This document shows positions 1,891 through 60,947 of a stretch of DNA of 64,000 nt, one piece after another. A model generated the notes under the pieces. That model saw only the letters and a program-made list of their open reading frames with translations, was not told the origin of the DNA and made no database searches. The stretch lies in the IMG/VR virus record IMGVR_UViG_3300033153_015063, positions 1 through 64,000 of that record. One strand, 5' to 3'. Numbering within the stretch: position 1 is the stretch's first letter; every line of letters starts with the position of its first letter. A program made the translations under genes and the position numbers.

Positions 1891-1910
1891 ACAACTTGAT
1901 TTGTATTCAG

Positions 1911-1952
1911 TCTTTATATAGTTTCATAGACCAAGACCGTAAAAAGCGTAAA
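1911..1952 (-). promoter_or_regulatory. Operator-class promoter 1 (TTTACGCTTTTTACGG upstream of TATATAAAG)
   Basis: Motif recurs 9 times; TATA 30 nt before helicase ATG. Confidence 0.8.
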
Positions 1953-2011
1953 TGTCTGTTTCATCTGGTCGCTCCCTGAAGAGATACTCCTCAGACCACC
2001 TCGGCCCTCGG

Positions 2012-2473
2012 TCACGACCTTGGTATAAGAGGGACCCGTTGCCATCTCCCACAGTTCAAACACTGAGCTCTGTAGGTCCGACAATGCCATCCACCACCCC
2101 GGTATTCCTTCATCAAGTCGCCACAACCAGGGCAGGTTGGTATCTTTGGTTTGATAGTGCGATTTAGAAGTAGTTTCTCTTCCATGAGTGAAACGGTCCC
2201 CAATAATTTTTCTATGATAAGGTCTTTTTCTCCGATGATCTTTTCCAGGGCATCAATACGTCCTTTTTCCTTATCGAGCTCATCGTTGAGATGCCTCGGT
2301 GCCTGTTTCTTCTTTCCCTTTTCATCTTTATGTCGTGCGAGCTTCAGGTTGACGGCCTGGCCAGTGGTCCCAAACATCTCTCCAATATCCTTGTTGGTGA
2401 GTTTCGGGCTCTTTTTCTTCATCCTGATTATTTCAGGTGCAGAGGGTAGTTTTGAAGGTCTACCACCAGGCAT
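2012..2473 (-). CDS. Putative DNA-binding protein (HTH, coiled coil, Zn ribbon)
   Basis: LTNKDIGEMFGTTGQAV HTH-like segment; CPGC...CLNC; upstream CTTTTTAAAC box. Confidence 0.55.
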   Translation of the reverse strand: MPGGRPSKLPSAPEIIRMKKKSPKLTNKDIGEMFGTTGQAVNLKLARHKDEKGKKKQAPRHLNDELDKEKGRIDALEKIIGEKDLIIEKLLGTVSLMEEKLLLNRTIKPKIPTCPGCGDLMKEYRGGGWHCRTYRAQCLNCGRWQRVPLIPRS

Positions 2474-2536
2474 CTATCTCACTTCCATTGTAAAACGGTA
2501 AGATAGGGAGAGTTTAAAAAGAGTACCCTAACCTTA

Positions 2537-3520
2537 TCAGAAATCCAACACGTTATGGCCCTCGGATTCCAGCCTGGCCTCGGCTATCTCAAAGGCACCA
2601 TATCCATCATTGGTGTTCTCCCCGATCTCACTTTCGAACCCGATGTATTTTCTACCCAGGCGATGAGCTGCAATAGCCGTTGTCCCAGAACCAATGAAAG
2701 GGTCCAATACCACATCGCCAAGCCTACTTCCGATGGTGATAAGGTAGGACATCAACTTGATGGGTTTGACTGAGATATGGGTGTTCTTGACCTTCTTTTT
2801 TCTACCTTCCTGTTCTTTGGCCTCGTAGCCCACATTACACCCACAGTTGTAATCCTTTCTTTTTCCGCATTCCACACAGAATAGATTATGAGAGTAGTAG
2901 TCACGATTCCTGGTCTCCGCTATTTGTTCAGTGACGCAGGACCCCTCTCTTTCGAAGTTCTCCAGGCCTTTTTCCTTTTCACTACGTGATGGTTTAGGAA
3001 CGATGAGAAAAGGAAAAGTTCTTTGAATGCTATCGGGTAATTGGTCGATAAGTTTTTCCCACCACCTATCGAGAGAAAAGAACATCGAGTAGTCACCTTC
3101 GTCGCCATAACCCCCCATCTGGAAGTCATCATAACCCCATTTTCCCGCTTTCTCATCTTTTGGTCTGGTTGTTTTACCGCCATCAGATTTCCTGATACAC
3201 CCATCATCAAGTACGTTGTCAGATACCAGTAGGTTCGGGGCAAAGCGACCTCTTGGGTCCACTACTGCATCATCCATCGACTTGTAACCATACTCAGCGG
3301 AACCAGTACCGATACGCCGGCCCTCGACGTTGTGCCGGCCACCGACGGATGGTTCCTCGGTCTCTCCATAGGGTATTTTTCCATCGTCCAACCAACAACA
3401 TCCAGTCCCTTGTTTGCAGAAATGAGCAATAGGTGGTTTTCTGAATTTACCATTAGGCAATCTTTCAACTTCCACCTCGATGCCATTATAATCTATTTCG
3501 TAGATTTTCTTTTCTTCCAT
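2537..3520 (-). CDS. Split N4/N6 DNA methyltransferase, C-terminal part
   Basis: HISVKP, DPFIGSGTT motif I; continues the alignment with intact paralogue 35816-37084 from KQGTG. Confidence 0.85.
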   Translation of the reverse strand: MEEKKIYEIDYNGIEVEVERLPNGKFRKPPIAHFCKQGTGCCWLDDGKIPYGETEEPSVGGRHNVEGRRIGTGSAEYGYKSMDDAVVDPRGRFAPNLLVSDNVLDDGCIRKSDGGKTTRPKDEKAGKWGYDDFQMGGYGDEGDYSMFFSLDRWWEKLIDQLPDSIQRTFPFLIVPKPSRSEKEKGLENFEREGSCVTEQIAETRNRDYYSHNLFCVECGKRKDYNCGCNVGYEAKEQEGRKKKVKNTHISVKPIKLMSYLITIGSRLGDVVLDPFIGSGTTAIAAHRLGRKYIGFESEIGENTNDGYGAFEIAEARLESEGHNVLDF

Positions 3521-4391
3521 CCTTCTTCCCTCAGTACCATCTTAATAGGAAACACAGAACAATTAAAATGAGAAGCACATTCTTTTACAGTTTTGTTTTT
3601 AACTATATAAAGTTCAAATAATGTCTTTTTATTGATATTGACTATTCTTTTATTAGATATATTAAACTTTCTCATATTTCTTTCTACAGTCGATGTTGAA
3701 CAACCAAAATATATTGAGGTTTCTTTTACAGTGTGTGTCGAGAGGAAATTTCTTAGTCCGTTTTCTTTTATGTTATATTTGAAGTTCGGGTTCAGTTTAC
3801 CTTTTCTTGCTTTAGCTTTCCGACTAATCTTCTTTCTCACATCAGGTCGTTTTGATGGATTTTTATCTCCTTTTATCCTCCCTTTTAATGTCTTACTTCT
3901 TTTTTTGTTGATTTCCTTTGGTTGCTTCTTTCCCCACATATAATGCTTTTCACCACTACATTTCTCTTCCATAGCTCTCTTATGTATCTGACGAACTATC
4001 TCATTTTCCATTGGATTGATATCTCCTCCTAAAGTCATATTGTAACCATTACCATTTCCTATAAACGTATCATATTCCTCAATAAAACTAACTTCCATAT
4101 TTCTTAATTCCTCGATAGATTCTGATTCATAAAGAGTAGTATATGTAAAGTTCTCTATCCCATATTCCTTTATCTTTTTATCTATTAATAGAGTAGGATT
4201 GGTATAACCTGATATTTTTTTATGTTCTTTCCATCTTTTATCCAACCCTCTACTATCAATACCAATATACATTTTATTATTTAGAGTATTTGTTATACAG
4301 TACACTACTCCCATTCTACATCAACTCCATATTTCTTTTCTATATCGAGTTTGATTTCCTCTAATATTCTTTCCTCTTCCCTTAATCTAGA
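3416..4391 (-). mobile_element. 976-bp homing-endonuclease insertion splitting a methyltransferase
   Basis: Removing it joins TYVDQAL to KQGTGCCWLDDGKI, which aligns without gaps to TFVENALKWGVAGLNIDGARI of the paralogue. Confidence 0.75.
3493..4314 (-). CDS. GIY-YIG homing endonuclease with NUMOD3-like and HTH repeats
   Basis: GVVYCITNTLNNKMYIG, R and E catalytic positions, GYNMT; AT-rich relative to flanks. Confidence 0.9.
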   Translation of the reverse strand: MGVVYCITNTLNNKMYIGIDSRGLDKRWKEHKKISGYTNPTLLIDKKIKEYGIENFTYTTLYESESIEELRNMEVSFIEEYDTFIGNGNGYNMTLGGDINPMENEIVRQIHKRAMEEKCSGEKHYMWGKKQPKEINKKRSKTLKGRIKGDKNPSKRPDVRKKISRKAKARKGKLNPNFKYNIKENGLRNFLSTHTVKETSIYFGCSTSTVERNMRKFNISNKRIVNINKKTLFELYIVKNKTVKECASHFNCSVFPIKMVLREEGWKKRKSTK

Positions 4392-5006
4392 TAGTGCCTG
4401 GTCCACATAGGTTTTTTCACTCAGTGGAACCATCGCCACTATGATGACCTCAACTGCTGGCTTAGGATTATAGCCTCCATAGGACCCTTCCATCGCCTTT
4501 GCCTCTTCTGTGGATGGTGCTGTTATATCACCCGCATCTCCTGTGCCACCAGTAGAACCACCATCACATCTCTTTGAGAATACAGCAGTATCTCTGGAAT
4601 AATTATATTGTTTGTGATGTGAACGACCTACTACTTCTCTCTCGACGCCAGCCCGTTCGTCAATCTTCTTCGAGATGTTTGGTGCCTTAGGCCACCCTGT
4701 AGCATAGGTCCAGTAGATGCTACTATTGGAAACCACAAATCCAGCGTCGTGGAGGTTGAGTATCATCTTTGCAAGGACATCTTGACGAGGCGATGACATC
4801 ACAAAGGCGAAGGACCCTGGTTTTAGGACCCGTAGACATTCCCTCCAGATTTCGACAGGCGGGACCCCTCGGTCCCAGTTTCGACCCATAAACGATAATC
4901 CATAAGGTGGATCTGTGATGATGGTATCAATGCAATTATCAGGAAGATGCACAGGCATACCAACCAGGCAATCCTCGTTGTAGATGATGTCGGTTTTGAA
5001 ATCCAT
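4305..5006 (-). CDS. Split N4/N6 DNA methyltransferase, N-terminal part
   Basis: MDFKTDIIYNEDC, TDPPY motif IV; start moved to 5006 to fit upstream TATA. Confidence 0.85.
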   Translation of the reverse strand: MDFKTDIIYNEDCLVGMPVHLPDNCIDTIITDPPYGLSFMGRNWDRGVPPVEIWRECLRVLKPGSFAFVMSSPRQDVLAKMILNLHDAGFVVSNSSIYWTYATGWPKAPNISKKIDERAGVEREVVGRSHHKQYNYSRDTAVFSKRCDGGSTGGTGDAGDITAPSTEEAKAMEGSYGGYNPKPAVEVIIVAMVPLSEKTYVDQALSRLREEERILEEIKLDIEKKYGVDVEWE

Positions 5007-5046
5007 ATGAAAGATACACACTAGATGGAGTTTAAAAAGATTCTTA

Positions 5047-5772
5047 TCAAATTTTCCTGAACACCATAAAGTGATGAAACCCACGTAGTAGGAATTTATT
5101 CTTTGTAGCACGATAGTGCCAGAGACCACCGGTCCCGGCCTGGTTCCTGACAGTGACAGAGATGTATTCGACTGGTTCAAAGTCTCGTTCAAGGAATAAT
5201 TGGTAGATACGCCAGCCTGCCGGTATGAACCTACCCTTTTTACTCTCATCCCCAATAAGCCAACCGACTGGCCCGCCACTCTTCAGGACTCTGTGAATCT
5301 CATCAATGACCTCCGCCATCGCCTCGAAGAAAGCATCGTCAGAGACAGGTATTTTACCTATATCTTCAGGATTATCTCCATAGTCGATGTTATCTCCATA
5401 AGGTGAATCGCAGAACACGGCGTCTATTGAATCCTCATTGAACACCTCACTGAGATTCCTAGCGTCGCAGAGTTCAATGTCGTCTCGATGCACATGCACA
5501 TCTGACCCAACAGCCTCTCGATCCATCATTTCAGCGACGTCGATGGTTGTTCCAGACCCACAAAATGGGTCGAGAACCAGATCACCTGGTTGGGTCCAGA
5601 GATGTAGGAAGTTCCAGATTACCCTGGCGGGTGTAACACCCCGGTATTTGTTATCACCACCTTTCACCTGCTTGTCACTCTGGGTCGGAAAATCCCAGAG
5701 AGTAGTGGTCTCTGGTTGGACCCCAACTCTCTTAACAAGTTCTTCTGGTAGATCATCCTCGAAGAAACTCAT
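5047..5772 (-). CDS. DNA methyltransferase (motif I before motif IV)
   Basis: DPFCGSGTT then DSPY, HRVLKSGG. Confidence 0.85.
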   Translation of the reverse strand: MSFFEDDLPEELVKRVGVQPETTTLWDFPTQSDKQVKGGDNKYRGVTPARVIWNFLHLWTQPGDLVLDPFCGSGTTIDVAEMMDREAVGSDVHVHRDDIELCDARNLSEVFNEDSIDAVFCDSPYGDNIDYGDNPEDIGKIPVSDDAFFEAMAEVIDEIHRVLKSGGPVGWLIGDESKKGRFIPAGWRIYQLFLERDFEPVEYISVTVRNQAGTGGLWHYRATKNKFLLRGFHHFMVFRKI

Positions 5773-5775
5773 ATA

Positions 5776-6438
5776 TTAAACCTCGCTTTTCTTTGATAGA
5801 AGTTTCAGACTGGTATCCGAGATAGTTTGATCTGAATCCAAATCCATCTCACCTATACCTTCGTTCATGTCTCCGTCCTCCAGCCACTTTCTATAGAATT
5901 TGAAGTGCTTTTTACATCCACTACAGAACATAGTATTCCCGGTAACCTTGTATTCGATACCACAATCACAGGGGTTTTGTTTCTCATAAATATTCCCGAC
6001 GATGTAGATTGACCCCTGTCTCACGACATCGAAGTCAAATAGGTCGATCTTTGGTTGTGGAACCCGCTCAGAACCTATGTAATCAGTCCAGCTCACCTCT
6101 AGCATGAACCTGGGGTAATACTTACCACGTGTCTCTTTCTTCCAGACCACTACACCCCTTATCAGATCATCTCTCAATGCGGGTTTGTTAGAGAATGTCT
6201 GGAAGGTAATGATGTCCCCTTCGTAGATGTTGTTACCTCTCCGGTCCTCCATCCCGATAGATGGCATCAGAACGTCACCCTCGTCGGTGCCGATGACCTC
6301 GGTACCCAGGTTATCTTCCTCTTCTATCGCAGCATTCCACGACCCATCACAGTAGACTGTCACACTATCGTAGAACCTCTGATGCCTGACAGACCAGGCA
6401 CGGAAATTGAATTCTCTCTCATCCTCGCACATGACCAC
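5776..6438 (-). CDS. YopX-family protein with C-terminal Zn ribbon
   Basis: FRAW, MEDRRGNNIYEGDII, VGNIYE; then FCSGCKKHF. Confidence 0.75.
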   Translation of the reverse strand: MVMCEDEREFNFRAWSVRHQRFYDSVTVYCDGSWNAAIEEEDNLGTEVIGTDEGDVLMPSIGMEDRRGNNIYEGDIITFQTFSNKPALRDDLIRGVVVWKKETRGKYYPRFMLEVSWTDYIGSERVPQPKIDLFDFDVVRQGSIYIVGNIYEKQNPCDCGIEYKVTGNTMFCSGCKKHFKFYRKWLEDGDMNEGIGEMDLDSDQTISDTSLKLLSKKSEV

Positions 6439-11759: not shown

Positions 11760-13721
11760 TTACACTTCCACCTCAGCTTCGAGTGCGTGTAAGAAGATAA
11801 AATCACGGCGGTGGCTCGGGTCCGTACCCATCAACTCCTCGAAAGCATTGGCCGTTGCCTCTTCATCCTCTATCTTGACCTGTATCAGAGTTCTACTATC
11901 AGGGTCCATCGTGGTTTCCCATAACTGGTCTGAGTTCATCTCACCCAGACCTTTGTATCGTTGAATCTCCATCTTACCAGTCCTGGTCAGCATCTTCTCA
12001 ACTACCTGTTCCTTCTCTTCCTCATTTATAACGTAGACAACTGAACGGCCCTTCGTTATTTTGTAGAGTGGAGGGCAAGCAACGAACACATGACCCTCTC
12101 TTATAAGAGTTGGGAGATATCTGAAAAAGAAGGTTAGTATAAGTATCTGGATATGGGCCCCATCTTCATCAGCATCACACATTATTATTATACGATTATA
12201 TCTGAGGTCATCATAATTGAAAATGCCAGTCAACTCGATCCCTGTCCCTATTACAGAAATCATCGACTGTATTTCACGGTTCTTCAGCACCTGACCCACG
12301 TCTACCTTCTCGACATTCCGCACTTTTCCTCGAAGAGGAAGAATTGCCTGTGTACGTCTGTCACGACCCTGTTTTGCCGTCCCACCGGCCGAGTTACCCT
12401 CTACTATGAACAACTCACACTCATCAGTATTCCGTGATGAACATGGTACGAACGATCCCTGGCTTTTCGGTAAGCCTCGCCTCTTACCTTTAGTTGCTTC
12501 TCTGGCCCTCTTGGCAGCCTCACGGGCCTTCCTCGAAGTGATTGCCCTTTCCACTATCAGCTTCGACTCTCGGATGTTTTTATCCAACCACTTCGACAGG
12601 TGCTCAGATACGACGTTATCAACTATTTTTCTGACCTCGGCGTTACCCAATCTGTACTTGGTCTGACCCATGAACTCTGGCTCAGGGACCTTCAAGGATA
12701 TTATTGATACGAGACCTTCTCTCACGTCTTCACCGCTGAGGGAACCATTCTTGTTGAGTCCGTGCTTCTCCGAGAATGAATTGATGGTCCTGGTGAAAGC
12801 AGACCTGAACCCCGCTGCGTGGGTTCCGCCTTCGATGGTTGGGATATTGTTGACGAAGGAAAGGAAGGTCTCACCATCGGCATAAGTATAGTAGAAGCCA
12901 ATCTCCACCAGCACTTCATCCCTGGTCTGGGAAATATACTCTGGTTTGTGGTGAATGGCACTCTTGTTACCTTTCAATTTCAAAACATAATCTTTCAAAC
13001 CACCTTTATGATGGTAGATAACCTCGTCCTCGTCGAGGTAGGTAAAGATGATAGCCAGACCGGGATTGAGATACGCCAGTTCATCACAGCGTTTTGAAAT
13101 CCTCTCCTCTGAAAATTTCCTAGGCCCGAACATCGTCTGGTCTGGCCTGAACCTGATAAGAGTTCCGGTCCCTCTCACCGGAACCTCCGTCAACTCCCTG
13201 GGTATCGAAGCATCCGTTAATTTCTTCGTGGTCGATTTGGTTAACGACAGCCGTGAAATTGGGGCATTAGCAACCCCCCGGGTGTATGACACCATCCAGA
13301 GCTTGTTTTGACGCCATACGTATGCTTCCAGGGTATCAGACAGGGCATTGGTCACCGACACCCCAACACCATGTAACCCACCAGAGACCTTGTAAGCACA
13401 CTTGTCAAACTTACCACCAGCATAGAGTGAGGTAAGAACCACCTCCAGGGCACTGGAACCACCGAACCTGGGGTCAGGATGCTTTCCAGTGGGGATACCC
13501 CTACCATTATCCTTGATGCTGACAAATCCACCTTTTTCAACGACTATGTTTATCTGGTCACAATAACCTGCGAGTGCCTCATCAATCGAGTTGTCGAGTA
13601 CCTCCCACAGCAGACGATGGAAACCACCTTCACCAACGTCATCAATGAACATGGCCGGACGTTTTCTGACTGCGTCAATACCATCAAGAGCTACGATGTC
13701 TTTGGCAGTATAACTTCCCAT
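11760..13721 (-). CDS. gyrB: Type IIA topoisomerase / DNA gyrase subunit B
   Basis: VRKRPAMF, EVLDNSIDE, DNGRGIP, SGGLHGVG, EGNSAGG, PLRGK, DADEDG, RYKGLGEM. Confidence 0.95.
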   Translation of the reverse strand: MGSYTAKDIVALDGIDAVRKRPAMFIDDVGEGGFHRLLWEVLDNSIDEALAGYCDQINIVVEKGGFVSIKDNGRGIPTGKHPDPRFGGSSALEVVLTSLYAGGKFDKCAYKVSGGLHGVGVSVTNALSDTLEAYVWRQNKLWMVSYTRGVANAPISRLSLTKSTTKKLTDASIPRELTEVPVRGTGTLIRFRPDQTMFGPRKFSEERISKRCDELAYLNPGLAIIFTYLDEDEVIYHHKGGLKDYVLKLKGNKSAIHHKPEYISQTRDEVLVEIGFYYTYADGETFLSFVNNIPTIEGGTHAAGFRSAFTRTINSFSEKHGLNKNGSLSGEDVREGLVSIISLKVPEPEFMGQTKYRLGNAEVRKIVDNVVSEHLSKWLDKNIRESKLIVERAITSRKAREAAKRAREATKGKRRGLPKSQGSFVPCSSRNTDECELFIVEGNSAGGTAKQGRDRRTQAILPLRGKVRNVEKVDVGQVLKNREIQSMISVIGTGIELTGIFNYDDLRYNRIIIMCDADEDGAHIQILILTFFFRYLPTLIREGHVFVACPPLYKITKGRSVVYVINEEEKEQVVEKMLTRTGKMEIQRYKGLGEMNSDQLWETTMDPDSRTLIQVKIEDEEATANAFEELMGTDPSHRRDFIFLHALEAEVEV

Positions 13722-28444: not shown

Positions 28445-30166
28445 CTACTTTTTCACTCTATGTAGGGTCCCTTTCGCCTTTTTTAGGAGCTCAGTTGTCT
28501 GCTTCAACCTCTCCGTTCTGTTCTTAACTCTGTCGCTCATAATAAGGTCACGGTTTTCAACCAACACCCCGGCGAAATGAGCTGCGTTGGTAGCTGCGTT
28601 CCGGTCAGCGTTGAGTTGGCGGCCGCAGTCACCACATCTGAACCATGAGTGCCAGTGTTCCCAGAAGACGCCAGATTTCCCTACATCTCCATGTTTACCC
28701 CACCCACCACACACTGAACACCGTTTGCAAGCCAGCGTCAAAGGAATCTTCTGGATAACGATGTTGGGAATCTCTCTCAGCTTATATGTGAGTTGCCAAT
28801 CTACGATATGGAAAGGCCACCTATTGGCCATCCTCCTGATAAAGTCCGGTAGGAGTTCCTCCTCGCAACCTACCATGTTTTCCAATCTACCAGCTTTGTC
28901 CCTACTTCCGGTGAAATCGTGGATGCAGACCAGGATGTTCCCGCCGAGTTCTTTGAGTTTGTTGGCAATCATCCTGGTTGCGTTGTGTAGCTCGTGCCTT
29001 AGAACCAACGACGCTTTTGTGAGATAAATAGATGCCTTCTTATACTTGATAGAAAGGTTCTTTTTTGTTATCGGGCGTTGATCTTTTCCACGACGGGTTG
29101 CCTTGGATTGTCTTTCCGCATACTTATCGTCACTTGACTTCCAGTCACGAAGCATTTTCTTTCCTTTATGTATGTAATGAAACAACTCTCGGCCAGTTCT
29201 GGCATCCAACACAACCAACGACATTGGACGATAGATACCACCATGAACACCAACAATATAGTCTATTTCATCTTTTTTGTAATCATAAACGTCCACATCA
29301 ACGGATAGTGTGATGTGAAGCCACCACTTACCATCCTTTGGTATCAAAGTCCCTGAACCATGTTTCAGGATCGCTTCAAGTGTAAGCTCGCACCATCCCT
29401 CCTGATAGTGTTTCTTACCGAACTCTTTCAACACCCCGGATCGGTCCCTGATTTGTGATGACTCTACCTGGGCTGAAAAAATACCATTACGATTTATTAC
29501 TCCAACACTAAAGACAATCCCAAAATTATTACCGTTTTTCTTAATTTTGATGGACCTGTTATGCAGTTCAATAACATTATACTTTTCATAGCTTGGTCTG
29601 TTCTTGTTATTGACGGGTTTCCTTGGCCCTTTTTTGGTTGATGTTCTGTTCATAATCTCATCAACCAACTTTGTTTTAATATCTGGGATCTGTTTTCTGG
29701 CTATTTTAAGTAGGATTTTTCTATACTCTCCTATTTCCTTTTTGTATTTCTTATTTCCCTTTTTTCTGGGGTAAGCCGGTGGATTGGCTACTTGACTGGT
29801 CAACCATGGCCACCATAACTTATATTTGTTGAGTAGAACATAGCTATCGGTACGCCAGAGACGGCTTATCCAATTGGACAATGAGGAACGAAAGTTGGCC
29901 AGAACAACCGATACCTGTTCCTGAACAGTAGTTGATGAAAGTAGTGTGGTATTGATTTTCTGATCTTTATTAATTCCTTGAGAAAGACGTAGAATATGTG
30001 GCGGGAGTTTAGGAGACTTAGGAATCTTACTGCCTTTGTAGTAAGATGGTATCATAATTGATGCATAGTCAGCTACATCTCTGGCCTGCCCAAGGGCCAC
30101 AAACAGACGTTCAGAGTCCTCTTTCTTGAACGTCAATGGGACCTGGATTGTTCTGATTGATTTCAT
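28445..30166 (-). CDS. cas12: Type V Cas12f-like effector with non-canonical, probably inactive RuvC
   Basis: IRTIQVPL N-terminus, RuvC-I VGVHGG, RuvC-II CIHDF, Zn finger CSVC...CGDC, RuvC-III NADRNAA; array starts 2 nt after stop. Confidence 0.85.
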   Translation of the reverse strand: MKSIRTIQVPLTFKKEDSERLFVALGQARDVADYASIMIPSYYKGSKIPKSPKLPPHILRLSQGINKDQKINTTLLSSTTVQEQVSVVLANFRSSLSNWISRLWRTDSYVLLNKYKLWWPWLTSQVANPPAYPRKKGNKKYKKEIGEYRKILLKIARKQIPDIKTKLVDEIMNRTSTKKGPRKPVNNKNRPSYEKYNVIELHNRSIKIKKNGNNFGIVFSVGVINRNGIFSAQVESSQIRDRSGVLKEFGKKHYQEGWCELTLEAILKHGSGTLIPKDGKWWLHITLSVDVDVYDYKKDEIDYIVGVHGGIYRPMSLVVLDARTGRELFHYIHKGKKMLRDWKSSDDKYAERQSKATRRGKDQRPITKKNLSIKYKKASIYLTKASLVLRHELHNATRMIANKLKELGGNILVCIHDFTGSRDKAGRLENMVGCEEELLPDFIRRMANRWPFHIVDWQLTYKLREIPNIVIQKIPLTLACKRCSVCGGWGKHGDVGKSGVFWEHWHSWFRCGDCGRQLNADRNAATNAAHFAGVLVENRDLIMSDRVKNRTERLKQTTELLKKAKGTLHRVKK

Positions 30167-30179
30167 GTGACAGTAAGTG

Positions 30180-30420
30180 TGGGGGGCAAAAGCCCCCCTT
30201 GATAGATTTCGACCGCCCCGCACTTTTCCCCTAACTCCGAAGAGATTGGTGACTTATGTACAGTTGGATAGCAGTACTCTGGGCCCAAACTGATGCACAG
30301 CCTGGGGGAACATACAACAGTCCCTGTTACCGGCGGTACGCAACCCCGGATTTCCGGTCTGGGAATCGAACCCAGCCTGGTTGGCCCAATTGACAACCAG
30401 TTCCAACATCCGAACATCTG
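30180..30420 (-). ncRNA. Putative tracrRNA
   Basis: TATA at 30443-30450; hairpin CCAGGCUG-UGCAU-CAGUUUGG whose loop pairs with repeat AUGCA; UCUAUCAA (30199-30206) pairs with repeat UUGAUAGA; terminal GGGGGGC-UUUU-GCCCCCC hairpin. Confidence 0.75.
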
Positions 30421-35815: not shown

Positions 35816-37084
35816 TCAGAAATCCATCACATCGCTTTTTACCATGATACTACCATCTTCGTCTATAGGAACCATTTCGCCTATCCTTTTCATAGCAATG
35901 TCATAGTAACGTTTTTCCCTCTCAAAACCAATATAATCCCTACCACATCTGGCTGCTGCGATAGCTGTAGTGCCCGACCCCATGAATGGGTCCAGGATGA
36001 TACCTCCACTTGGAGTTGCTGTGAGTCTGCAAAGATATTCTATCAACTCCAATGGTTTTACAGTTTCATGGTCGTTGTACTCACATCGTTCTGACCTCGA
36101 TGCTTTAGCACAGTAAAAAAATCTTGAAGGTCGGTCATCATTACCAACCTCATTGTCCAATAAATTACCTACATCCTCATCCAATATGAGATTGGCCGGA
36201 TAACGCCCTTTTGGATTATGGCGTTCCTCACCTAGATTTCGTGGTGGGGTCTTACCTTTACCCCATATCCCAGCACCAGGGACACTGGTCCTCCGTTCGC
36301 TATCTAGAACCTTACTCTCTATCCTCGCACCGTCGATGTTCAATCCGGCCACACCCCATTTCAAAGCATTCTCAACAAAGGTTCCATCGAGAGGTTTCAT
36401 AGCAACGAGGATGGTTTCCCATGCTGGTTTGAGTGAACTCCTCCAACCATCCCATATCTTTGCCTCCTCAGTCGCTGGAGTGGTAATATTGATCTCTCGT
36501 CTGCCAGCTTTCCAACCACCAGGAGCTTCATAGCCGCCATCCTTCTGGTTGATAAATATCCTTGCTCGCTTTTCATCGACACCAACGACCTCCCTCTCGG
36601 CTCCGGCGGCCTTGTCAATTCCCTTCGAGATATCGGTTCCCTTACCCCAACCCGACCCATACAACCACATCATTGTATCTCTAATTATCCATCCAGCATC
36701 CTCGATGGCACAGGCCAACCGATGCCAAGTTCTGGTACCAGAAAAAGCGAGAAAGAAAGCTCCTGGTTTTGCTACTCTTAAAGCCTCTACGGACCACTTA
36801 TAGTGCCACTCGTAAAGTTTTTGCATTTGTTTAATATGATTATGAGAACCGCCAAATTTTGGTGATGGTAAGTGCCTCGGCCATTTAATTCGCCTTTCTC
36901 CTATACCTGGTTTTTGAAATGGCTGAACGTCGCCTTCTTTCCAAGGCGAGTCCCACTCTGACATAAACGATAATCCATAAGGTGGATCTGTGATGATGGT
37001 ATCAATGCAATTATCAGGAAGATGCACAGGCATACCAACCAGGCAATCCTCGTTGTAGATGATGTCGGTTTCAATCTCGTCCAT
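35816..37084 (-). CDS. N4/N6 DNA methyltransferase (intact paralogue of split gene)
   Basis: TDPPY, GRYPAN, HETVKP, DPFMGSGTT. Confidence 0.9.
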   Translation of the reverse strand: MDEIETDIIYNEDCLVGMPVHLPDNCIDTIITDPPYGLSFMSEWDSPWKEGDVQPFQKPGIGERRIKWPRHLPSPKFGGSHNHIKQMQKLYEWHYKWSVEALRVAKPGAFFLAFSGTRTWHRLACAIEDAGWIIRDTMMWLYGSGWGKGTDISKGIDKAAGAEREVVGVDEKRARIFINQKDGGYEAPGGWKAGRREINITTPATEEAKIWDGWRSSLKPAWETILVAMKPLDGTFVENALKWGVAGLNIDGARIESKVLDSERRTSVPGAGIWGKGKTPPRNLGEERHNPKGRYPANLILDEDVGNLLDNEVGNDDRPSRFFYCAKASRSERCEYNDHETVKPLELIEYLCRLTATPSGGIILDPFMGSGTTAIAAARCGRDYIGFEREKRYYDIAMKRIGEMVPIDEDGSIMVKSDVMDF

Positions 37085-37096
37085 CTCGTTTCACCC

Positions 37097-38326
37097 TCAG
37101 AAATCCATCACGCTACTATCTCTCAACAAACCTTCGGTCTCGGCCCTGTCTATAGCCATCCTCACGTACTTCTCTGAAGTATCGCACCCCAACCAATCCC
37201 TACCCTCCTGGGTAGATACAACGGCTGTGGTCCCACTTCCCATGAAAGGGTCGAGAACGACACCGTCCGATGGGCAACATGCCTTGATGATTGGCCTGAT
37301 GAGCTCCTGTGGAAACACGGCATGATGGGCCTGCTTGAAGGGTTTGGTATTCTGTAAGATTGATACCACCCCATTCTCATCGTCCAATGCCCCATACTTC
37401 CCCATGTCATATCTGGCAGTAGATAACTCGTGTAGTAGTGTCTCCAGATTCTCTATGATGACGTCAATGGAATCTGAGTACCAGTCAATGGTTCTACGGT
37501 AGTGCCCCTGTTCTCTGATTGCTTCCCGATCATAGTAGTAGGATTCCTGCTTCGTGAGTACAAGGAAATATTCGTGTGCGATAGTAGGGCGATCCTTGGC
37601 GGATTCTGGCCGGATATTCCATTTCAACCATGGTACGACGGCCCGCCAATACCACCCAGCAGCCTGGAGAGACATTGCCAGACGCCAGGGGATACCAACC
37701 AAATCCTTCGGTTTTACACCCTCTGGGACCCTCACGGACATCCAGTTACCAACGTCCCCTACCTTCCCATCGACCTGTCCCCATGTCCTGTTTGCAGCGT
37801 ATGTATCACCGATATTCAGCCACAGAGACCCGGTGTCTTTGAGTACCCGCCAGTATTTCCCGAACACTGACGTCAGGTTGGAAACGTAGATGTTGGGTTC
37901 TGGTTCCAGACCAAGATGCCCCTTCCAAGCATCACACCATTTACAGTAGTATGACGTATATCCCTCGCCTCTGATGACACTCTCGCTCATCACCCGGTTC
38001 GCACCTACAGAAGAAGGTCGGTCAGGGTGGTTTTTACCACCCCTCGCAGGTGTAAAATGTTCCATCCACTCATGGGTACATTCATAGGGTTCCAAATCGT
38101 AACATTCTTTGTTCTGGGGATGGTAACAAAGTAACTCTTCACCATCACTGACCTGTTTACATTGCGGGCATCTCCGAAACCTTTTCCCACCCCACACCTC
38201 GGCTTTACCTAGATACTCTCTCAACATCCAGAATGGTGGTGATGTGACTATCAGGTCTACTATCCCATCTGGTAGAGTGTCGGCATACTCCATCGTATTC
38301 GATAAAGCGACTGTGTTGAGTGCCAC
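37097..38326 (-). CDS. N4/N6 DNA methyltransferase with Cys-rich insert
   Basis: TSPPF, HHAVFP, DPFMGSGTT; GTG start 30 nt after TTTATAAA. Confidence 0.88.
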   Translation of the reverse strand: MALNTVALSNTMEYADTLPDGIVDLIVTSPPFWMLREYLGKAEVWGGKRFRRCPQCKQVSDGEELLCYHPQNKECYDLEPYECTHEWMEHFTPARGGKNHPDRPSSVGANRVMSESVIRGEGYTSYYCKWCDAWKGHLGLEPEPNIYVSNLTSVFGKYWRVLKDTGSLWLNIGDTYAANRTWGQVDGKVGDVGNWMSVRVPEGVKPKDLVGIPWRLAMSLQAAGWYWRAVVPWLKWNIRPESAKDRPTIAHEYFLVLTKQESYYYDREAIREQGHYRRTIDWYSDSIDVIIENLETLLHELSTARYDMGKYGALDDENGVVSILQNTKPFKQAHHAVFPQELIRPIIKACCPSDGVVLDPFMGSGTTAVVSTQEGRDWLGCDTSEKYVRMAIDRAETEGLLRDSSVMDF

Positions 38327-38396
38327 TATCGAGAAATGGCCGCCCGTCTTTATAAAGAGTTTGAAAGCGTTCTGGAACTCCTTCATTTCCAGAACT

Positions 38397-51823: not shown

Positions 51824-53297
51824 ATGACCATAGTCGAAATCCCCCCAGGTTCAGGGAATAAATACAGGTACGTTTACGAACAATCAAGTCAGGACACTGT
51901 CTACAAGGGGCCAGTAGGCCAGGCCCCGGAACTGGGAGACCTATGTAGTTGGTGGTGCGGTCCGGGACCTCGTGATGGGTCGGGAACCGAAGGACTACGA
52001 TATTGCAACATCAGCTACTCCCGGAGAGATAAAGGACATCTTCGGAGACGAAGTGGCCAAGACAATCGGTGGTGACGTTCACGGGACTGTCCTTATCAAA
52101 GACCCCCGTCGGGGAGGACGAGAACCGATGGAGGTTACGACGTTCAGAAAAGAAACCTATGGTGAGGCGGGCCGAGGTAGAAGGCCCACAGATGTAGAGT
52201 GGACCCGTTCGCTTGAAGAGGATCTCGGGCGTCGGGATTTTACTATCAACGCCATGGCCATGAAGACCGATGGAACTGTCATAGACCCCTACAACGGTAT
52301 TTCTGACATCAAAGCAGGTGTTATCCGGGCGGTGGGGAACCCAGACCTACGTTTCGATGAAGACCGTCTCAGGATGCTTCGGGCTGTCCGTTTCGCCAGC
52401 AGGTTTGGGTTCGATATCGAATCGGGCACAAAAAATTCGATCCAGAGAAACAAAGACAGCATCAACGAGTTACGGGCTGACGGACAACGTGTTGTGTCAT
52501 GGGAACGTATCAGAGGTGAGTATGACAAGGGTTTCTCACAACAGATGTTTGAGGCTGCCGCTGAGGTAGGGTTACTCGATGAAACCATACCAGAGGTCGC
52601 TGACCTGATTGGCTTTGAACAACGGAACCCCTGGCACTATGGCGACGTCTACGCACATACGATGGATGTGGTCAATGAGGGTATGAAGATGGAAGCACCG
52701 AAGGAGGTTAGGTGGGCATCTCTTCTCCATGATGTTGGTAAGATACAAACACGAACCATCGAAGAAAAGGAAGGCCAACAGATACATCGCTTCTTTGGGC
52801 ACGACAAGGTATCGGCTACGATGTCAGACGAGATACTGACCAAACTCAAATTCCCCAATGATGAGAAGGAATACATCAAGCTTCTGGTCTCGAAGCACAT
52901 GGTTCAACTGCCAGACGTCGATGACCCAGGTTTTGGTCGGGCGGTGGACCGATGGGAACGGAGGCTACAAGCAAAAGTGAAGAAGAACCCCAACAAATAC
53001 AAACCCAGGGTTGCAGGGGACCTGTTGATGCTTCGTAAGGCCGATGCCCTTGCCCATGTCGGTGGCGTCGAACTGGCTACCAATGTTGATGCGGTCCAGA
53101 GACACCGAGAGAACAGACAACCTGTGGTCGAGGTCAAACCAGTCCTGAGTGGCAAAGACCTGATAAACATGGGCTATGACCCTGGACCCAGGTTCAAGGA
53201 TATATTACAGTCTCTTACAGATTGGGAAGATGACCTTGGTTACAGACCAACGAAAGAGATGGCCCAGACCTTCATTGAAGAGAATTATGGTGAATGA
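51824..53297 (+). CDS. cca: VEIPPGSG module (copy 9) joined out of frame to class II CCA-adding enzyme with HD domain
   Basis: Module from ATG 51824; YVVGGAVRD, DYDIAT, RRDFTINA, EDRLRMLRAVRF, LLHDVGK in the +1 frame from about 51930. Confidence 0.85.
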
Positions 53298-57976: not shown

Positions 57977-60355
57977 TTAGTAGATAGTAAGCCCTTGGAC
58001 CTTTTTCTTCGCAATATATACGTATAGAATTTTTCCATCTACCAACTTCTGGCCACCTCGCTTAATCTCCTCAGCCTTCTTTAACACTACAGATCCATCT
58101 TCTTTAAAGAGATAAACTTCATCGTCGGGTCCTATGCCCCATACCCCGATAAGTTTTTTCTTCTGTGCTTGTGGTACTATTTCAAGTACCTTACCGACCA
58201 ATCCCCTGTTCCTATCTGAAATCTCTTCAATAGGACATTTCCTCCCCCACCCAGTTGTGGAGACCATCAACACCTCTTCACGTTCCGATACAACCGACGC
58301 CCCCCGGCACTCTGTATCAACCTTGATTCCCCTCACACCAACACCATCCCTGTTCGTAGGCCTTATATCTCCAATTGGATAAGATACGTATCTGGCAATT
58401 TCATCAACGTGGATAATCCGTGTATCATCACCTGGGAACCTACCGAATCCATACGACAGATCCGCATCTATAAGGAAATCTCCATATCTGATAGTCAACA
58501 TCTTGGTACTGGCCCGATTGCTGTTCAATGAAGATAACTTGATTGCTTTGACTTTTCCTGATCGTAGAAAGAAATAAACTTTTCTATCATCGAACTCCTC
58601 TATGGCCATAACCTTTCTGAAAATCTCTTCGCCACAAACCTTCAATATCTCATGGAACGGAGTTCCTTTCCCTTTTTCACTCAGAGGTATGTCCCATGCC
58701 TTTACCCGGTGAGCTCTATCATCGGTAAAGAAAAGGATTGTATCGTGAGATGAACACTGTACCATATCCACCAATCCCTTCCCCTGGGTTTTCTTTTTCC
58801 GCCAACTTGACAGATAGTCTTTTTTTATCCCATCAGACGTTAATGATATAATTATATCACGATCTTTTACCATGTCTGATTTTTCCACATCCACCGGTTT
58901 TTTAATCAAACTCGATCTTCTGGACGATGTAAACACGTCCCTCATGTTATTGATTTCATCTACTATAAGCCTCAATATTTTCTTATCATCGGATACTGTA
59001 ATGGAAAGTGCTTTGATATCGACTGAAAGTTCTTTGACCTTCTCCTCCAACTCATCAACCTCGAATCTCGCCAACCTTTTGAGAGACATTTGCATCACGG
59101 CTTTTGCTTGTGTCTCACTGAAACCCATCTCGACCAATGAATAGATCAACTCCTTATCGGTTGTGCAGACCTTCACCTTCTCTATGATGGTGTCGATGAT
59201 AGGAAGTGCCTTCATCAACCCAACCTTGATATTGTAATCATAGGTTTTCTTTTCGAGTTCAAACTCTACCCGACGCTGGACCACCGACATCCTGTGTTCG
59301 ATCCACCGCTGAAACAGGTGGTAAAGAGAGACCTCTATCGGTATCCCACCATCCAGTACAAGGTTGAGATACGAGTACGTCTGGTCAAGTGATGTCCTTT
59401 TCAGTATCTGGTTCCTCACAACCTGAGGTTCGTCTCCCCGTTTGACCTCGATGACTATACGAAGTGTGTCACTACTCTCATCACTGTAATCTGCAATACC
59501 AGAGTTTTTCTCCTCAGCCAACTTCTCCAGTTGCCCGAACAGTTTCTCCTTTGTAAGGTTGTAAGGTAGTTCTGTGATGATGACCCTGTTCTTTTCCGTC
59601 CTGATTTTAGCTCTGACGTGAAACGAACCTCGGCCTGTCTCAAAAATCTTCCGAAAGTCCCCATAGACCTCACCACCTGTAGGAAAATCCGGGCCACGCA
59701 TGAACATCATATAACCATTCACAGCCTCAGAAACCCGCTGTTTTTCGTCGCTCAACGACGCTAGACCATCCATGTTATGGATATGCCAGACCGCTGCGGT
59801 TATCACTTCCTGGATGTTGTGTGGATACATCCTGGTCGCCATCCCAACAGCAATCCCTTCGGTCCCATTGATAATTAGATTAGGAACCATCGCCCCGAGT
59901 ACCGTGGGTTCTTTGAGAGACCCATCAAAGTTAGGAATGAAATCGACGTACTGGTTATCAGTATCTTCGAGTAGGTACAAGGAATATTTTGAAAGGGTAG
60001 CTTCGGTGTATCTCATTGAAGCTGGTGCATCTGGGTCATTGGAACCGAAGTTACCCTGACCTATCACCATAGGCTCCCTGACTTGCCAGTCCTGTGCCAT
60101 CCTCACCATAGTAGAGTAAACGGACTGGTCACCGTGTGGATGCCACTTTCCCATCACATCTCCAACGATACGAGCTGACTTGACAGGTTTTCCGCCCGGT
60201 TTCAGACCCAACTCCATCATCGCCCATAGAATACGCCGTTGGGCCGGTTTCAGCCCATCTCTGACATCTGGTAGGGCCCTGACCAGAGAAATCATCGAGT
60301 AATCAAGTAGGTTCTTTTGGAGAAGGTCGATGATGTCCCTACCATTTATAGACAC
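57977..60355 (-). CDS. gyrA: Type IIA topoisomerase / DNA gyrase subunit A
   Basis: [29 protein letters not shown] catalytic Tyr, GPDFPTGG, C-terminal pinwheel-like repeats. Confidence 0.93.
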
Positions 60356-60858: not shown

Positions 60859-60947
60859 CCGGGGGTGGCTGAGTGGCCGAAGGCGAGGGGTTTAAATCCC
60901 ATCGGCGTCGCTGCCCATCGTGGGTTCGAATCCTGCCCCCCGGACCA
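60859..60947 (+). tRNA. tRNA-Leu(UAA), CCA encoded
   Basis: CCGGGGG/CCCCCGG acceptor, GAGTGG D-loop, TAA anticodon, long variable arm, GGTTCGAATCC, discriminator A; TATATAAA upstream. Confidence 0.8.

What the first reader, a model, noticed from the sequence alone, without database searches (positions are those of the whole stretch)
2537..5006. Methyltransferase split in two by a homing endonuclease with no visible intron or intein
Seen: a 976-bp insert lies exactly between DQAL and KQGTG. The three ORFs overlap head to tail (4305-4314, 3493-3520), leaving no non-coding space for a group I core. Frame changes and stops exclude an intein. Each half has gained new residues (SRLREEERILEE...WE tail; MEEKKIYEIDYNG... 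head) and both keep their catalytic motifs. Known: phage Aeh1 nrdA is split by mobE and works as two polypeptides. Inference: a two-subunit methyltransferase, or an unrecognised archaeal-type intron.
Basis: partly seen in the sequence, partly recalled or inferred. Interest (0 to 1): 0.65.

Follow-up and report, generated by a model that had tools for sequence, protein, structure and literature searches.

The report
Docking cassette splits a phage methyltransferase
A homing-endonuclease gene has cut a jumbo-phage DNA methyltransferase gene in two, and it is flanked by two short conserved peptides, found in dozens of other uncultured phages, that probably hold the two enzyme halves together without RNA or protein splicing.

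Summary
On the minus strand lie three overlapping ORFs: the methyltransferase (MTase) N-half (4305-5006), a GIY-YIG homing endonuclease, HE (3493-4314), and the MTase C-half (2537-3520). The 976-bp low-GC insert (3416-4391) sits where unsplit homologues are continuous.

It is not an intron or an intein:
- Rfam finds no intron.
- The flanks lack the intein fold and its nucleophiles.
- Related loci (L018, L032) have the two halves overlapping by 4 nt with nothing between them.

The "new residues" are not idiosyncratic. The 28-aa tail of the N-half and the ~30-aa head of the C-half belong to a conserved module:
- It occurs in 54 protein clusters, all MTases, always at residue 1.
- It accompanies GIY-YIG HEs, HNH HEs or no HE.
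- It occupies two different sites and two MTase subfamilies, and one MTase is in three pieces.
- Tail and head share the HE's third-position GC, not the MTase's.
- Split forms are scattered among unsplit ones on the MTase tree (one clade rejected, p 6e-7).
- A complex model places the tail on the head (0.79 against a best control of 0.08).

Best reading: a mobile endonuclease cassette that carries its own docking peptides. This generalises the single Aeh1 NrdA precedent. Nothing has been tested at the bench.

The parts
4305..5006 (-). MTase N-half gene (233 aa, P0001), stop codon included: beta-class N6/N4 DNA MTase, with motif IV DPPY at 4902-4913
   Evidence: Alignment A3 shows that homologues start at this ATG.
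4392..5006 (-). N-half core, homologous to unsplit MTases up to ..YVDQAL
   Evidence: GC 0.48, GC3 0.45.
4308..4391 (-). Tail: 28 codons absent from unsplit homologues. Predicted as an amphipathic helix followed by a short strand ending ..KYGVDVEWE
   Evidence: The tail is conserved in about 24 other N-halves, with the W at least 90% conserved. GC3 is 0.29, like the HE. Tail residues 206-233 touch head residues 7-42 in the complex model.
3493..4314 (-). GIY-YIG homing endonuclease gene (273 aa, P0003). The catalytic domain lies at 4066-4314 and helix-turn-helix-like motifs follow it. Its ATG lies inside the tail codons GAA-TGG
   Evidence: PF01541 23.4 bits against a cut-off of 22.6. phrog_314 E 5e-29 and phrog_7168 E 4e-23. 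52% identical to the HE at the same place in L015. GGAG lies 10 nt upstream of the ATG.
3416..3520 (-). Head: the first 35 codons of the C-half. It forms a beta-hairpin, then the LPNGKF turn. The last 5 codons (3416-3430, IAHFC) align with VDQAL of unsplit enzymes
   Evidence: The head profile A5 finds 54 cluster representatives with the head at residue 1. G13, L21, G24 and P29 are invariant. GC3 is 0.34. GAGGG at 3528-3532 lies 7 nt before the ATG.
2537..3520 (-). MTase C-half gene (327 aa, P0002), stop codon included. Motif I DPFIGSGTT lies at 2678-2704
3416..4391 (-). The whole cassette (tail, stop, HE, start, head): 976 bp forming one low-GC unit

Best explanation
The window holds one copy of a recurrent endonuclease-bearing 'docking cassette' inserted in frame into a beta-class DNA (probably N6-adenine) methyltransferase gene of a 243-kb jumbo phage. 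The cassette supplies several things in order: about 28 codons and a stop to the upstream gene piece, a free-standing GIY-YIG homing endonuclease gene, and then a ribosome-binding site, a start codon and about 30 codons to the downstream piece. The three genes are probably co-transcribed and translated separately. The two MTase halves reassemble into one Rossmann-fold enzyme: the N-terminal strand with DPPY packs against the C-terminal AdoMet-binding part. The added tail (helix plus strand) packs on the added head (beta-hairpin plus turn) and acts as a non-covalent clamp. No RNA or protein splicing is involved. The endonuclease spreads the cassette, tail and head included, into related MTase genes by double-strand-break repair, and the docking peptides make the insertion harmless to the phage.

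Shown here: the anatomy; conservation of and purifying selection on tail and head; their occurrence with different HEs, with no HE, at two sites and in two subfamilies; their HE-like composition; and the scattered distribution on the MTase tree.

Inferred: that the halves bind through the module, that the enzyme is active, and that the HE homes.
For: 1. Anatomy and the continuity of unsplit homologues across the insertion point.

2. Conservation. Other N-halves end in the same kind of tail. Other C-halves begin with the same head. Tail and head are as conserved as, or more conserved than, the enzyme cores in pairwise comparisons; L016 against L018 gives tail 70%, head 83%, cores 51-57%.

3. 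The module does not depend on the HE. It occurs with GIY-YIG HEs (window, L015, L031, L016, L013), with HNH HEs (L014, L017, L030, L033, P0023), and with none. In L018, genes 3501-4139 and 4136-4981 overlap by 4 nt.

4. Purifying selection where no HE is present. L018 against L032 gives, for the head, 19 identical, 9 synonymous and 1 non-synonymous codons; the C core gives 72, 53 and 11.

5. Portability. The same tail and head occur at a second site, after ..GFPKxxNI and before ..GSYGGFQPKP (L030 and ten class-2 representatives). They also occur in a distant MTase subfamily (L033 and eight class-3 representatives). A 92-aa middle piece carries both a head and a tail, giving a three-piece MTase (P0279, L032).

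6. Composition. Pooled over six loci, GC3 of tail plus head is 0.250, the HE 0.251, the MTase cores 0.465 (Fisher p 5e-15) and gene-end controls 0.507 (p 2e-11).

7. Phylogeny of the C cores. The careful tree needs 20 split/unsplit changes, at least 8 of them forced by starred branches. The window's C-half is sister to unsplit P0005 and P0006 (100/99). The AU test rejects one clade of split forms (delta lnL 356, p 5.8e-7).

8. Complex model of the two halves. ipSAE was 0.79 (three runs: 0.78-0.79) against a best control of 0.08. That mark was reached by 58 of 80 solved complexes and 2 of 110 mismatched pairs. The runs share at least 85% of their contacts and the partner's pLDDT is at least 58. 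Tail residues 206-233 touch head residues 7-42, and V230, E231 and W232 lie against F26 with an expected error of 0.8-0.9 A.

9. Precedent. In phage Aeh1 the tails that arose with the mobE insertion are essential for the activity of the split NrdA (PMC3045599).
Against: There is no experimental datum: no RNA, protein, methylation or cleavage data, and no sequencing run was listed.

Two halves of one fold are expected to co-fold in a predictor, and solved beta-class MTases exist. The complex score may therefore reflect likeness, and my own alignments were used, so the calibration holds only roughly.

A single-chain model of the middle piece P0279 gave confident local structure (hairpin and helix, pLDDT about 83). 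It gave no confident packing of its head on its tail (pTM 0.31), although those two are not cognate partners.

The head profile was found only in MTases, so portability is shown only within this enzyme family.

HE-like GC3 of tail and head could come from co-conversion tracts during homing into already split alleles, rather than from movement of the whole cassette into unsplit genes.

The tree rests on about 218 columns, and recombination between MTase genes could also scatter the split state.
Confidence: 0.72

Rival explanations
1. An anciently split MTase with a squatting endonuclease. The gene was split once, long ago. Tail and head evolved in place and are inherited vertically with the MTase. 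The junction between the two genes is simply a convenient intergenic landing site for free-standing HEs, as in T4 seg/mob genes. On this view the HE in the window did not cause the split and does not carry the module.
For: HE-less split loci exist (L018, and L032 site 1). Two unrelated HE families occupy the same gap. The head occurs only in MTases.
Against: One clade of split forms is rejected (p 5.8e-7), and the window's C-half is nested among unsplit enzymes at 100/99 support. The same module sits at a second site and in a second subfamily. Tail and head have the HE's GC3, not the core's, in six loci. The HE start codon lies inside tail codons and the HE's 3' end overlaps head codons, so the parts are physically interlocked.
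Confidence: 0.15
2. A decaying, non-functional MTase. The HE insertion killed the gene and the two ORFs are remnants.
For: There is no direct evidence of activity. The phage has at least three other MTase genes that could make this one dispensable. In L014 the N-part carries a further break without any module.
Against: Both halves are full length with intact motifs IV and I. The arrangement persists across loci whose cores are only 45-55% identical. Synonymous changes far outnumber non-synonymous ones in head and core. Start signals are in place.
Confidence: 0.06
3. A degenerate or atypical split intein that still trans-splices the halves, as in the 'fractured genes' that carry a free-standing HE between intein halves.
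For: The layout is the same as in fractured genes (PMC2677866). The head is about the length of a C-intein. The residue before the resumed MTase sequence is usually T or C.
Against: Tail plus head total about 55-60 aa, less than half of a minimal HINT domain. Pfam finds no intein family even at E 10. The first tail residue varies (S, G, K, A, N, L or Y), so there is no N-terminal nucleophile. The head ends in F, Y or L, not in Asn or Gln. The tail is predicted helical, not beta.
Confidence: 0.03
4. An intron (group I, group II or archaeal bulge-helix-bulge) with an HE ORF, spliced from the mRNA to give one continuous MTase.
For: GIY-YIG HEs are often intron-encoded (established knowledge). Removing exactly 976 nt would restore the reading frame.
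Against: Rfam at E up to 10 gives no intron family in 2400-5400. Only 154 nt of the insert lie outside the HE ORF, and they encode peptides conserved at the protein level. The junctions pair no better than shuffles (p 0.15). L018 and L032 have split halves with zero intervening nucleotides.
Confidence: 0.02

Closest known systems
Aeromonas phage Aeh1 nrdA-a / mobE / nrdA-b (Friedrich et al. 2007; Crona et al. 2010, PMC3045599)
   Same: A free-standing HE splits an enzyme gene and overlaps the downstream piece. The insert has low GC. Both pieces gain unique tails absent from unsplit homologues. The tails are needed for activity. There is no RNA or protein splicing.
   Different: The Aeh1 case is a single locus with an HNH-type HE in a ribonucleotide reductase. 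Its tails have no known relatives, and they promote dimerisation of heterodimers rather than the binding of the two pieces. Here the tail and head form a conserved family (54 clusters). They occur with two HE families or none, at two sites and in two MTase subfamilies, and they are predicted to bind each other directly.
Fractured genes: split inteins with a free-standing HE between the halves (Dassa et al. 2009, PMC2677866)
   Same: Host gene piece, added peptide, HE gene, added peptide, host gene piece. They occur mainly in uncultured phages. GIY-YIG HEs are among those used. Gene-control elements are brought in with the HE.
   Different: Those flanks are true HINT-domain halves with splicing residues. 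Here the flanks are far too short, lack the residues and have a different predicted structure. No MTase is among their eight host enzyme types.
T4 gene 39 / mobA / gene 60, and split gp43 DNA polymerases of T4-related phages (as discussed in PMC3045599 and PMC2677866)
   Same: HE-associated fission of a conserved phage enzyme into separately translated pieces. Tail-like extensions have been noted on gp39 and gp60.
   Different: No conserved, recurrent docking module has been reported for them. The role of the tails there is speculation.
Group I introns carrying GIY-YIG HEs (I-TevI in T4 td; established knowledge)
   Same: The same HE superfamily, and insertion at a conserved site of a conserved phage gene.
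   Different: Those rely on a ribozyme core and RNA splicing. Neither is present here.
Naturally two-chain or engineered split DNA MTases (M.AquI and M.EcoHK31I from my own knowledge; split M.HhaI and M.SssI, PMC2836561 and PMC3404938, seen here only as titles and abstracts)
   Same: They show that fragments of a DNA MTase can reassemble into an active enzyme.
   Different: Those are C5-cytosine MTases. They have no HE and no dedicated docking peptides in nature; zinc fingers or leucine zippers are added by engineers.

Membership tests
HE-fragmented gene reassembled through added tails (Aeh1 NrdA type) | A free-standing HE ORF lies between two pieces of a gene that is continuous in relatives | tested here: met
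HE-fragmented gene reassembled through added tails (Aeh1 NrdA type) | Each piece has its own stop or start, and carries extra residues absent from unsplit homologues | tested here: met
   Tail at 4308-4391 and head at 3416-3520. GAGGG lies 7 nt before the C-half ATG.
HE-fragmented gene reassembled through added tails (Aeh1 NrdA type) | The tails are required for assembly or activity | not testable with these tools
   Support is indirect only: conservation, purifying selection, and tail-head contacts in the complex model (0.79 against a best control of 0.08; the mark was reached by 58 of 80 solved and 2 of 110 mismatched pairs).
Split intein / fractured gene | HINT domain (blocks A, B, F, G) of about 130 aa or more, shared between the two flanks | tested here: not met
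   The flanks total about 55-60 aa. No intein family appears in Pfam at E up to 10. The tail is predicted helical.
Split intein / fractured gene | Cys or Ser as the first intein residue; a terminal Asn (or Gln) followed by Cys, Ser or Thr | tested here: not met
   The first tail residue is S, G, K, A, N, L or Y. The head ends in F, Y or L. Only the following T or C is common.
Group I / group II intron with HE ORF | A ribozyme core detectable by covariance model, with non-coding sequence to hold it | tested here: not met
   Rfam at E up to 10 finds no intron. The 154 nt outside the HE ORF encode conserved peptides. HE-less relatives have 0 nt between the halves.
Group I / group II intron with HE ORF | Spliced mRNA | not testable with these tools
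   No sequencing run was listed for 2537-5006.
Archaeal bulge-helix-bulge intron | The two junctions pair into a bulge-helix-bulge motif | tested here: not met
   Duplex energy of the junctions is -18.6 kcal/mol against shuffles at -15.0 +/- 3.4; 15% of shuffles do as well.
GIY-YIG homing endonuclease | A GIY-YIG catalytic domain above the Pfam cut-off, followed by a DNA-binding part | tested here: met
   PF01541 23.4 bits against 22.6. Sub-threshold helix-turn-helix hits at residues 192-215 and 234-254. PHROG HE families at E 5e-29. Cleavage was not tested.
Beta-class N6/N4 DNA methyltransferase (PF01555) | Motif IV (D/S)PP(Y/F) near the N-terminus and motif I FxGxG near the C-terminus, in that order | tested here: met
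   DPPY is in the N-half and DPFIGSGTT is in the C-half. The solved relatives are CcrM, DpnA, M.MboIIA and M.PvuII. Base specificity and the target site were not tested.

The most novel reading that the evidence does not exclude
Tail-HE-head cassettes are a third class of self-neutralising intervening element, beside self-splicing introns and inteins. They would be selfish endonuclease genes that carry a matched pair of short docking peptides. Those peptides are translated onto the two ends of the broken host protein and re-join it non-covalently. That lets the element invade and move between conserved coding sites: here two sites and two subfamilies of phage DNA methyltransferases, once twice in the same gene.
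Probability: 0.5. Interest if true: 0.88.

Novelty: new variant of a known kind. Interest (0 to 1): 0.78.

Why it matters
Homing endonucleases are thought to survive inside essential genes only by hiding in introns or inteins. The Aeh1 ribonucleotide reductase showed one exception, in which tails that came with the insertion restore function. Its authors predicted that similar tails would be hard to recognise elsewhere.

This locus leads to a whole family in which the tails can be recognised. They are conserved, under selection and compositionally tied to the endonuclease. They are re-used at different sites, so the idea becomes directly testable and can be generalised.

The finding also offers a natural pair of roughly 30-residue peptides that may reassemble split proteins, which is of practical interest. 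It further shows that gene callers will systematically report such methyltransferases as fragments or pseudogenes.

Tried and rejected
- The search for related loci with the C-half in IMG/VR found no relative. With the HE it returned 9 loci at 29-40% identity, which I did not analyse further.
- A degenerate DNA pattern for LPNGK(F/Y)(K/R)xP in IMG/VR gave 11 loci. Two were true heads (the same contigs as L014 and L018). Nine were chance matches or Vsr-like nuclease ORFs selected by the pattern itself.
- The word search restricted to residues 1-40 found only the query.
- Pfam on isolated heads and tails at E up to 10 gave nothing meaningful.
- The ESM Atlas search on residues 1-36 returned only unnamed viral clusters and short structural look-alikes, which gave no usable lead.
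- No sequencing run was listed, so there was no read evidence for splicing or for presence/absence polymorphism.
- tblastn of a head plus the following 30 residues against 50,697 cultured-phage records found no match. The halves alone found only unsplit MTases there.
- The single-sequence fold of P0279 was poor (pLDDT 52). With an alignment, the local structure was good but pTM was 0.31, so I ran no fold search on it.
- RNA folds around the two internal starts were no better than shuffles, so there is no sign of an Aeh1-like hairpin sequestering the HE ribosome-binding site.
- There are no minus-strand terminator-like sites in 1900-5900.
- I built and searched no joined (spliced) MTase sequence. 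The halves were always handled separately, by reference.
Full report
**Where the window lies.** The window is the first 64 kb of a 242,596-bp virus record with direct terminal repeats, rated complete. It encodes T4-type topoisomerase II subunits, a CCA-adding enzyme, one tRNA and several DNA methyltransferases. It is therefore a jumbo phage known only from a metagenome.

- One search lists three minus-strand ORFs in three different frames: 4305-5279, 3493-4314 and 2537-3520. The true start of the first is the ATG at 5006, where the homologues of alignment A3 also begin.
- The ORFs overlap by 10 nt (4305-4314) and 28 nt (3493-3520).
- Both outer ORFs match PF01555. The first carries DPPY and the last carries DPFIGSGTT.
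- The middle ORF is a GIY-YIG endonuclease.
- Two cultured-phage MTases, BSP18 gp163 and Henu15 gp12, are continuous across the point between ..DQAL and KQGTG... So is the nearest metagenomic relative, P0005, at 57% identity.
- The insert is 3416-4391, or 976 bp. Its GC is 0.30-0.35 against 0.48 on both sides.
- The last five head residues fall in the same alignment columns as VDQAL of the N-half, so about 15 bp may be duplicated at the junction.

**It is not an intron.**
- An Rfam scan at E up to 10 finds no intron family.
- Only 154 nt of the insert lie outside the endonuclease ORF, and these encode conserved peptides.
- The two junctions pair no better than shuffled sequence.
- Most decisive: in locus L018 the two halves, each with its tail or head, overlap by 4 nt with nothing between them. 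The same holds at one junction of L032.

**It is not an intein.**
- The three frames differ.
- The flanks total about 55-60 residues.
- Pfam finds no intein family.
- The first tail residue is not conserved, and the head does not end in Asn.

**The added residues form a conserved module.**
- Searching with the C-half returned many stand-alone C-halves of 255-345 aa. All begin with the same head of about 30 residues: a hairpin, then LPNGKF, then KKP.
- Searching with the N-half returned about 24 stand-alone N-halves. After ..YVDQAL they end in a 23-34-residue tail with a helical E/K-rich stretch and a terminal ..Y(G/N)xxx(V/I)EW...
- In pairwise comparisons of nine loci, tail and head are as conserved as the enzyme cores or more so.
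- Between L018 and L032, the head shows 9 synonymous changes against 1 non-synonymous change. No endonuclease is present at that junction in either locus.

**What lies between the halves varies.**
- Homologous GIY-YIG genes: the window, L015 (a 198-kb contig with the same layout), L031, L016 and L013.
- Homologous HNH genes: L014, L017 and P0023.
- Nothing: L018.
- Among site-1 loci, all five with GIY-YIG genes have tails that begin (K/S/G)R..EE. Both of the HNH loci whose N-half tail was read (L014, L017) have tails that begin (L/N)WY.ER. The sample is small, but this fits joint inheritance of tail and endonuclease.

**The module is portable within the MTase family.** A profile of 19 heads was searched against 1.84 billion cluster representatives.
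- It found 54 clusters at E up to 0.001. Apart from a few long repetitive proteins, the head starts at or within 13 residues of residue 1.
- Of 40 scanned against Pfam, 27 match PF01555. None matches an unrelated enzyme family.
- Reading the hits shows three classes.
  - Class 1: the window's site.
  - Class 2: a second site about 35 residues upstream, where the head is followed by ..GSYGGFQPKPAVE.. There are ten representatives plus P0048.
  - Class 3: that same second site in a distant MTase subfamily, with eight representatives.
- L030 and L033 confirm that the N-pieces at the second site end in the same kind of tail and are followed by HNH genes.
- P0279 (92 aa, L032) has a head, the 35-residue hairpin segment and a tail. 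That enzyme is therefore in three pieces, with modules at both sites.

**The module belongs to the endonuclease, not to the MTase.**
- I pooled the six loci where the MTase core and the endonuclease differ in third-position GC (GC3). Tail plus head have GC3 of 0.250 (88/352) and the endonucleases 0.251.
- The MTase cores have 0.465 (p 5e-15).
- Gene-end controls, namely the first 30 codons of N-halves and the last 28 codons of C-halves, have 0.507 (p 2e-11).
- The endonuclease start codon lies inside the tail's GAA-TGG codons, and its 3' end overlaps the first head codons. The parts are interlocked.

**Split forms are scattered on the MTase tree.**
- *Rows.* The trees used C-core sequences, from the GRFPANL anchor to the end. 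Rows had to carry DP(F/Y)xGSG and be clearly split (head present, no DPPY) or clearly unsplit. Fragments were left out.
- *Quick tree.* With 124 rows it needs 23 changes between split and unsplit.
- *Careful tree.* It has 77 rows. I left out 37 near-identical members of one unsplit clade, seven near-duplicates, one identical row and two long-branch rows (P0233, P0248).
- *Result.* The careful tree needs 20 changes (bootstrap range 20-23). At least 8 are forced by starred branches. The window's C-half joins unsplit P0005 and P0006 at 100/99.
- *AU test.* It rejects a single clade of split forms: delta lnL 356, p 5.8e-7.
- *Reading.* The cassette has been gained or lost many times, as mobile introns and inteins are.

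**How the halves may fit together.**
- A complex prediction of the two halves, using alignments A3 and A4, scored 0.79 (runs 0.78, 0.79, 0.79) against a best control of 0.08.
- That mark was reached by 58 of 80 solved complexes and by 2 of 110 mismatched pairs.
- The runs share at least 85% of their contacts, and the partner's pLDDT is at least 58.
- Beside the expected contacts within the fold, tail residues 206-233 touch head residues 7-42. The tail contacts have helical periodicity and the head contacts alternate as in strands.
- V230, E231 and W232 lie against F26.
- This supports binding but does not show it. Halves of one known fold are expected to score well, and the calibration holds only roughly with my own alignments.
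- Single-chain models of P0279 confirm the local structure, a hairpin at 5-20 and a helix at 64-86. They do not give a confident overall packing.

**Comparison with what is known.**
- The closest precedent is phage Aeh1, where tails created by the mobE insertion are essential for the split NrdA (PMC3045599). Its authors suggested this could be general but hard to detect.
- 'Fractured genes' have the same layout but with true split inteins, and none of them is an MTase (PMC2677866).
- Full-text searches found no report of a natural HE-split N6/N4 MTase or of conserved docking tails.
- No cultured phage among 50,697 records has the head.

**Verdict.** I rate this a new variant of a known kind. 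The window's locus alone would be one more HE-split gene. The family behind it is what is new.

**Limits.**
- Everything here is computational.
- No run was listed for the region.
- I built and searched no joined MTase sequence.
- Host, base specificity, target site, endonuclease activity and actual assembly all remain untested.

Noticed in passing
window 5047-5772 (-), 35816-37084 (-), 37097-38386 (-): There are three further DNA MTase genes in the window. One lies directly upstream of the split gene and has motif I before motif IV. The 422-aa one is unsplit at the very site that is broken in the split gene (..FVENALKWGVAGLNIDG..). The phage appears to modify its DNA heavily.
   Followed up: partly
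L032 229-507 (protein P0279): A 92-aa gene encodes a head, a 35-residue MTase hairpin segment and a tail. It shows an MTase in three pieces, with an HNH gene at one junction and none at the other.
   Followed up: partly
L014 2903-3500: The N-part of this split MTase is broken once more at 3183-3208 (..GFPKA stop, then a new frame). That is the position of the second insertion site, but no tail or head is present. It may be a frameshift, decay or an assembly error.
   Followed up: no
window 28445-30223 (-): A 592-aa ORF matches phage 'transposase' PHROGs 506 and 12300 (E 6e-14), inside a jumbo-phage genome.
   Followed up: no
window 11760-13721 (-) and 57977-60355 (-): T4-type topoisomerase II subunits are encoded 44 kb apart. 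Nearby are a CCA-adding enzyme (51972-53297, +) and tRNA-Leu(TAA) (60859-60947, +).
   Followed up: no
window about 2831-2875 (P0002 residues 216-230): A CxxC...CxC insert (CVECGKRKDYNCGCN) lies in the variable region of the C-half. It is shared with some split and unsplit relatives (P0012, P0045) and may be a small zinc-binding element.
   Followed up: no
L013 3245-5089; L014 5283-5594: Neighbours of other split MTases include a gene with an intein splicing domain (PF14890) and a phage-borne ribosomal protein S21 gene.
   Followed up: no
L020 664-689, L024 858-883, L025 1130-1155: Vsr-like nuclease ORFs contain ..LPNGKYKNPDF.., which resembles the head motif. The search pattern itself selected them, so I give the likeness no weight.
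   Followed up: no
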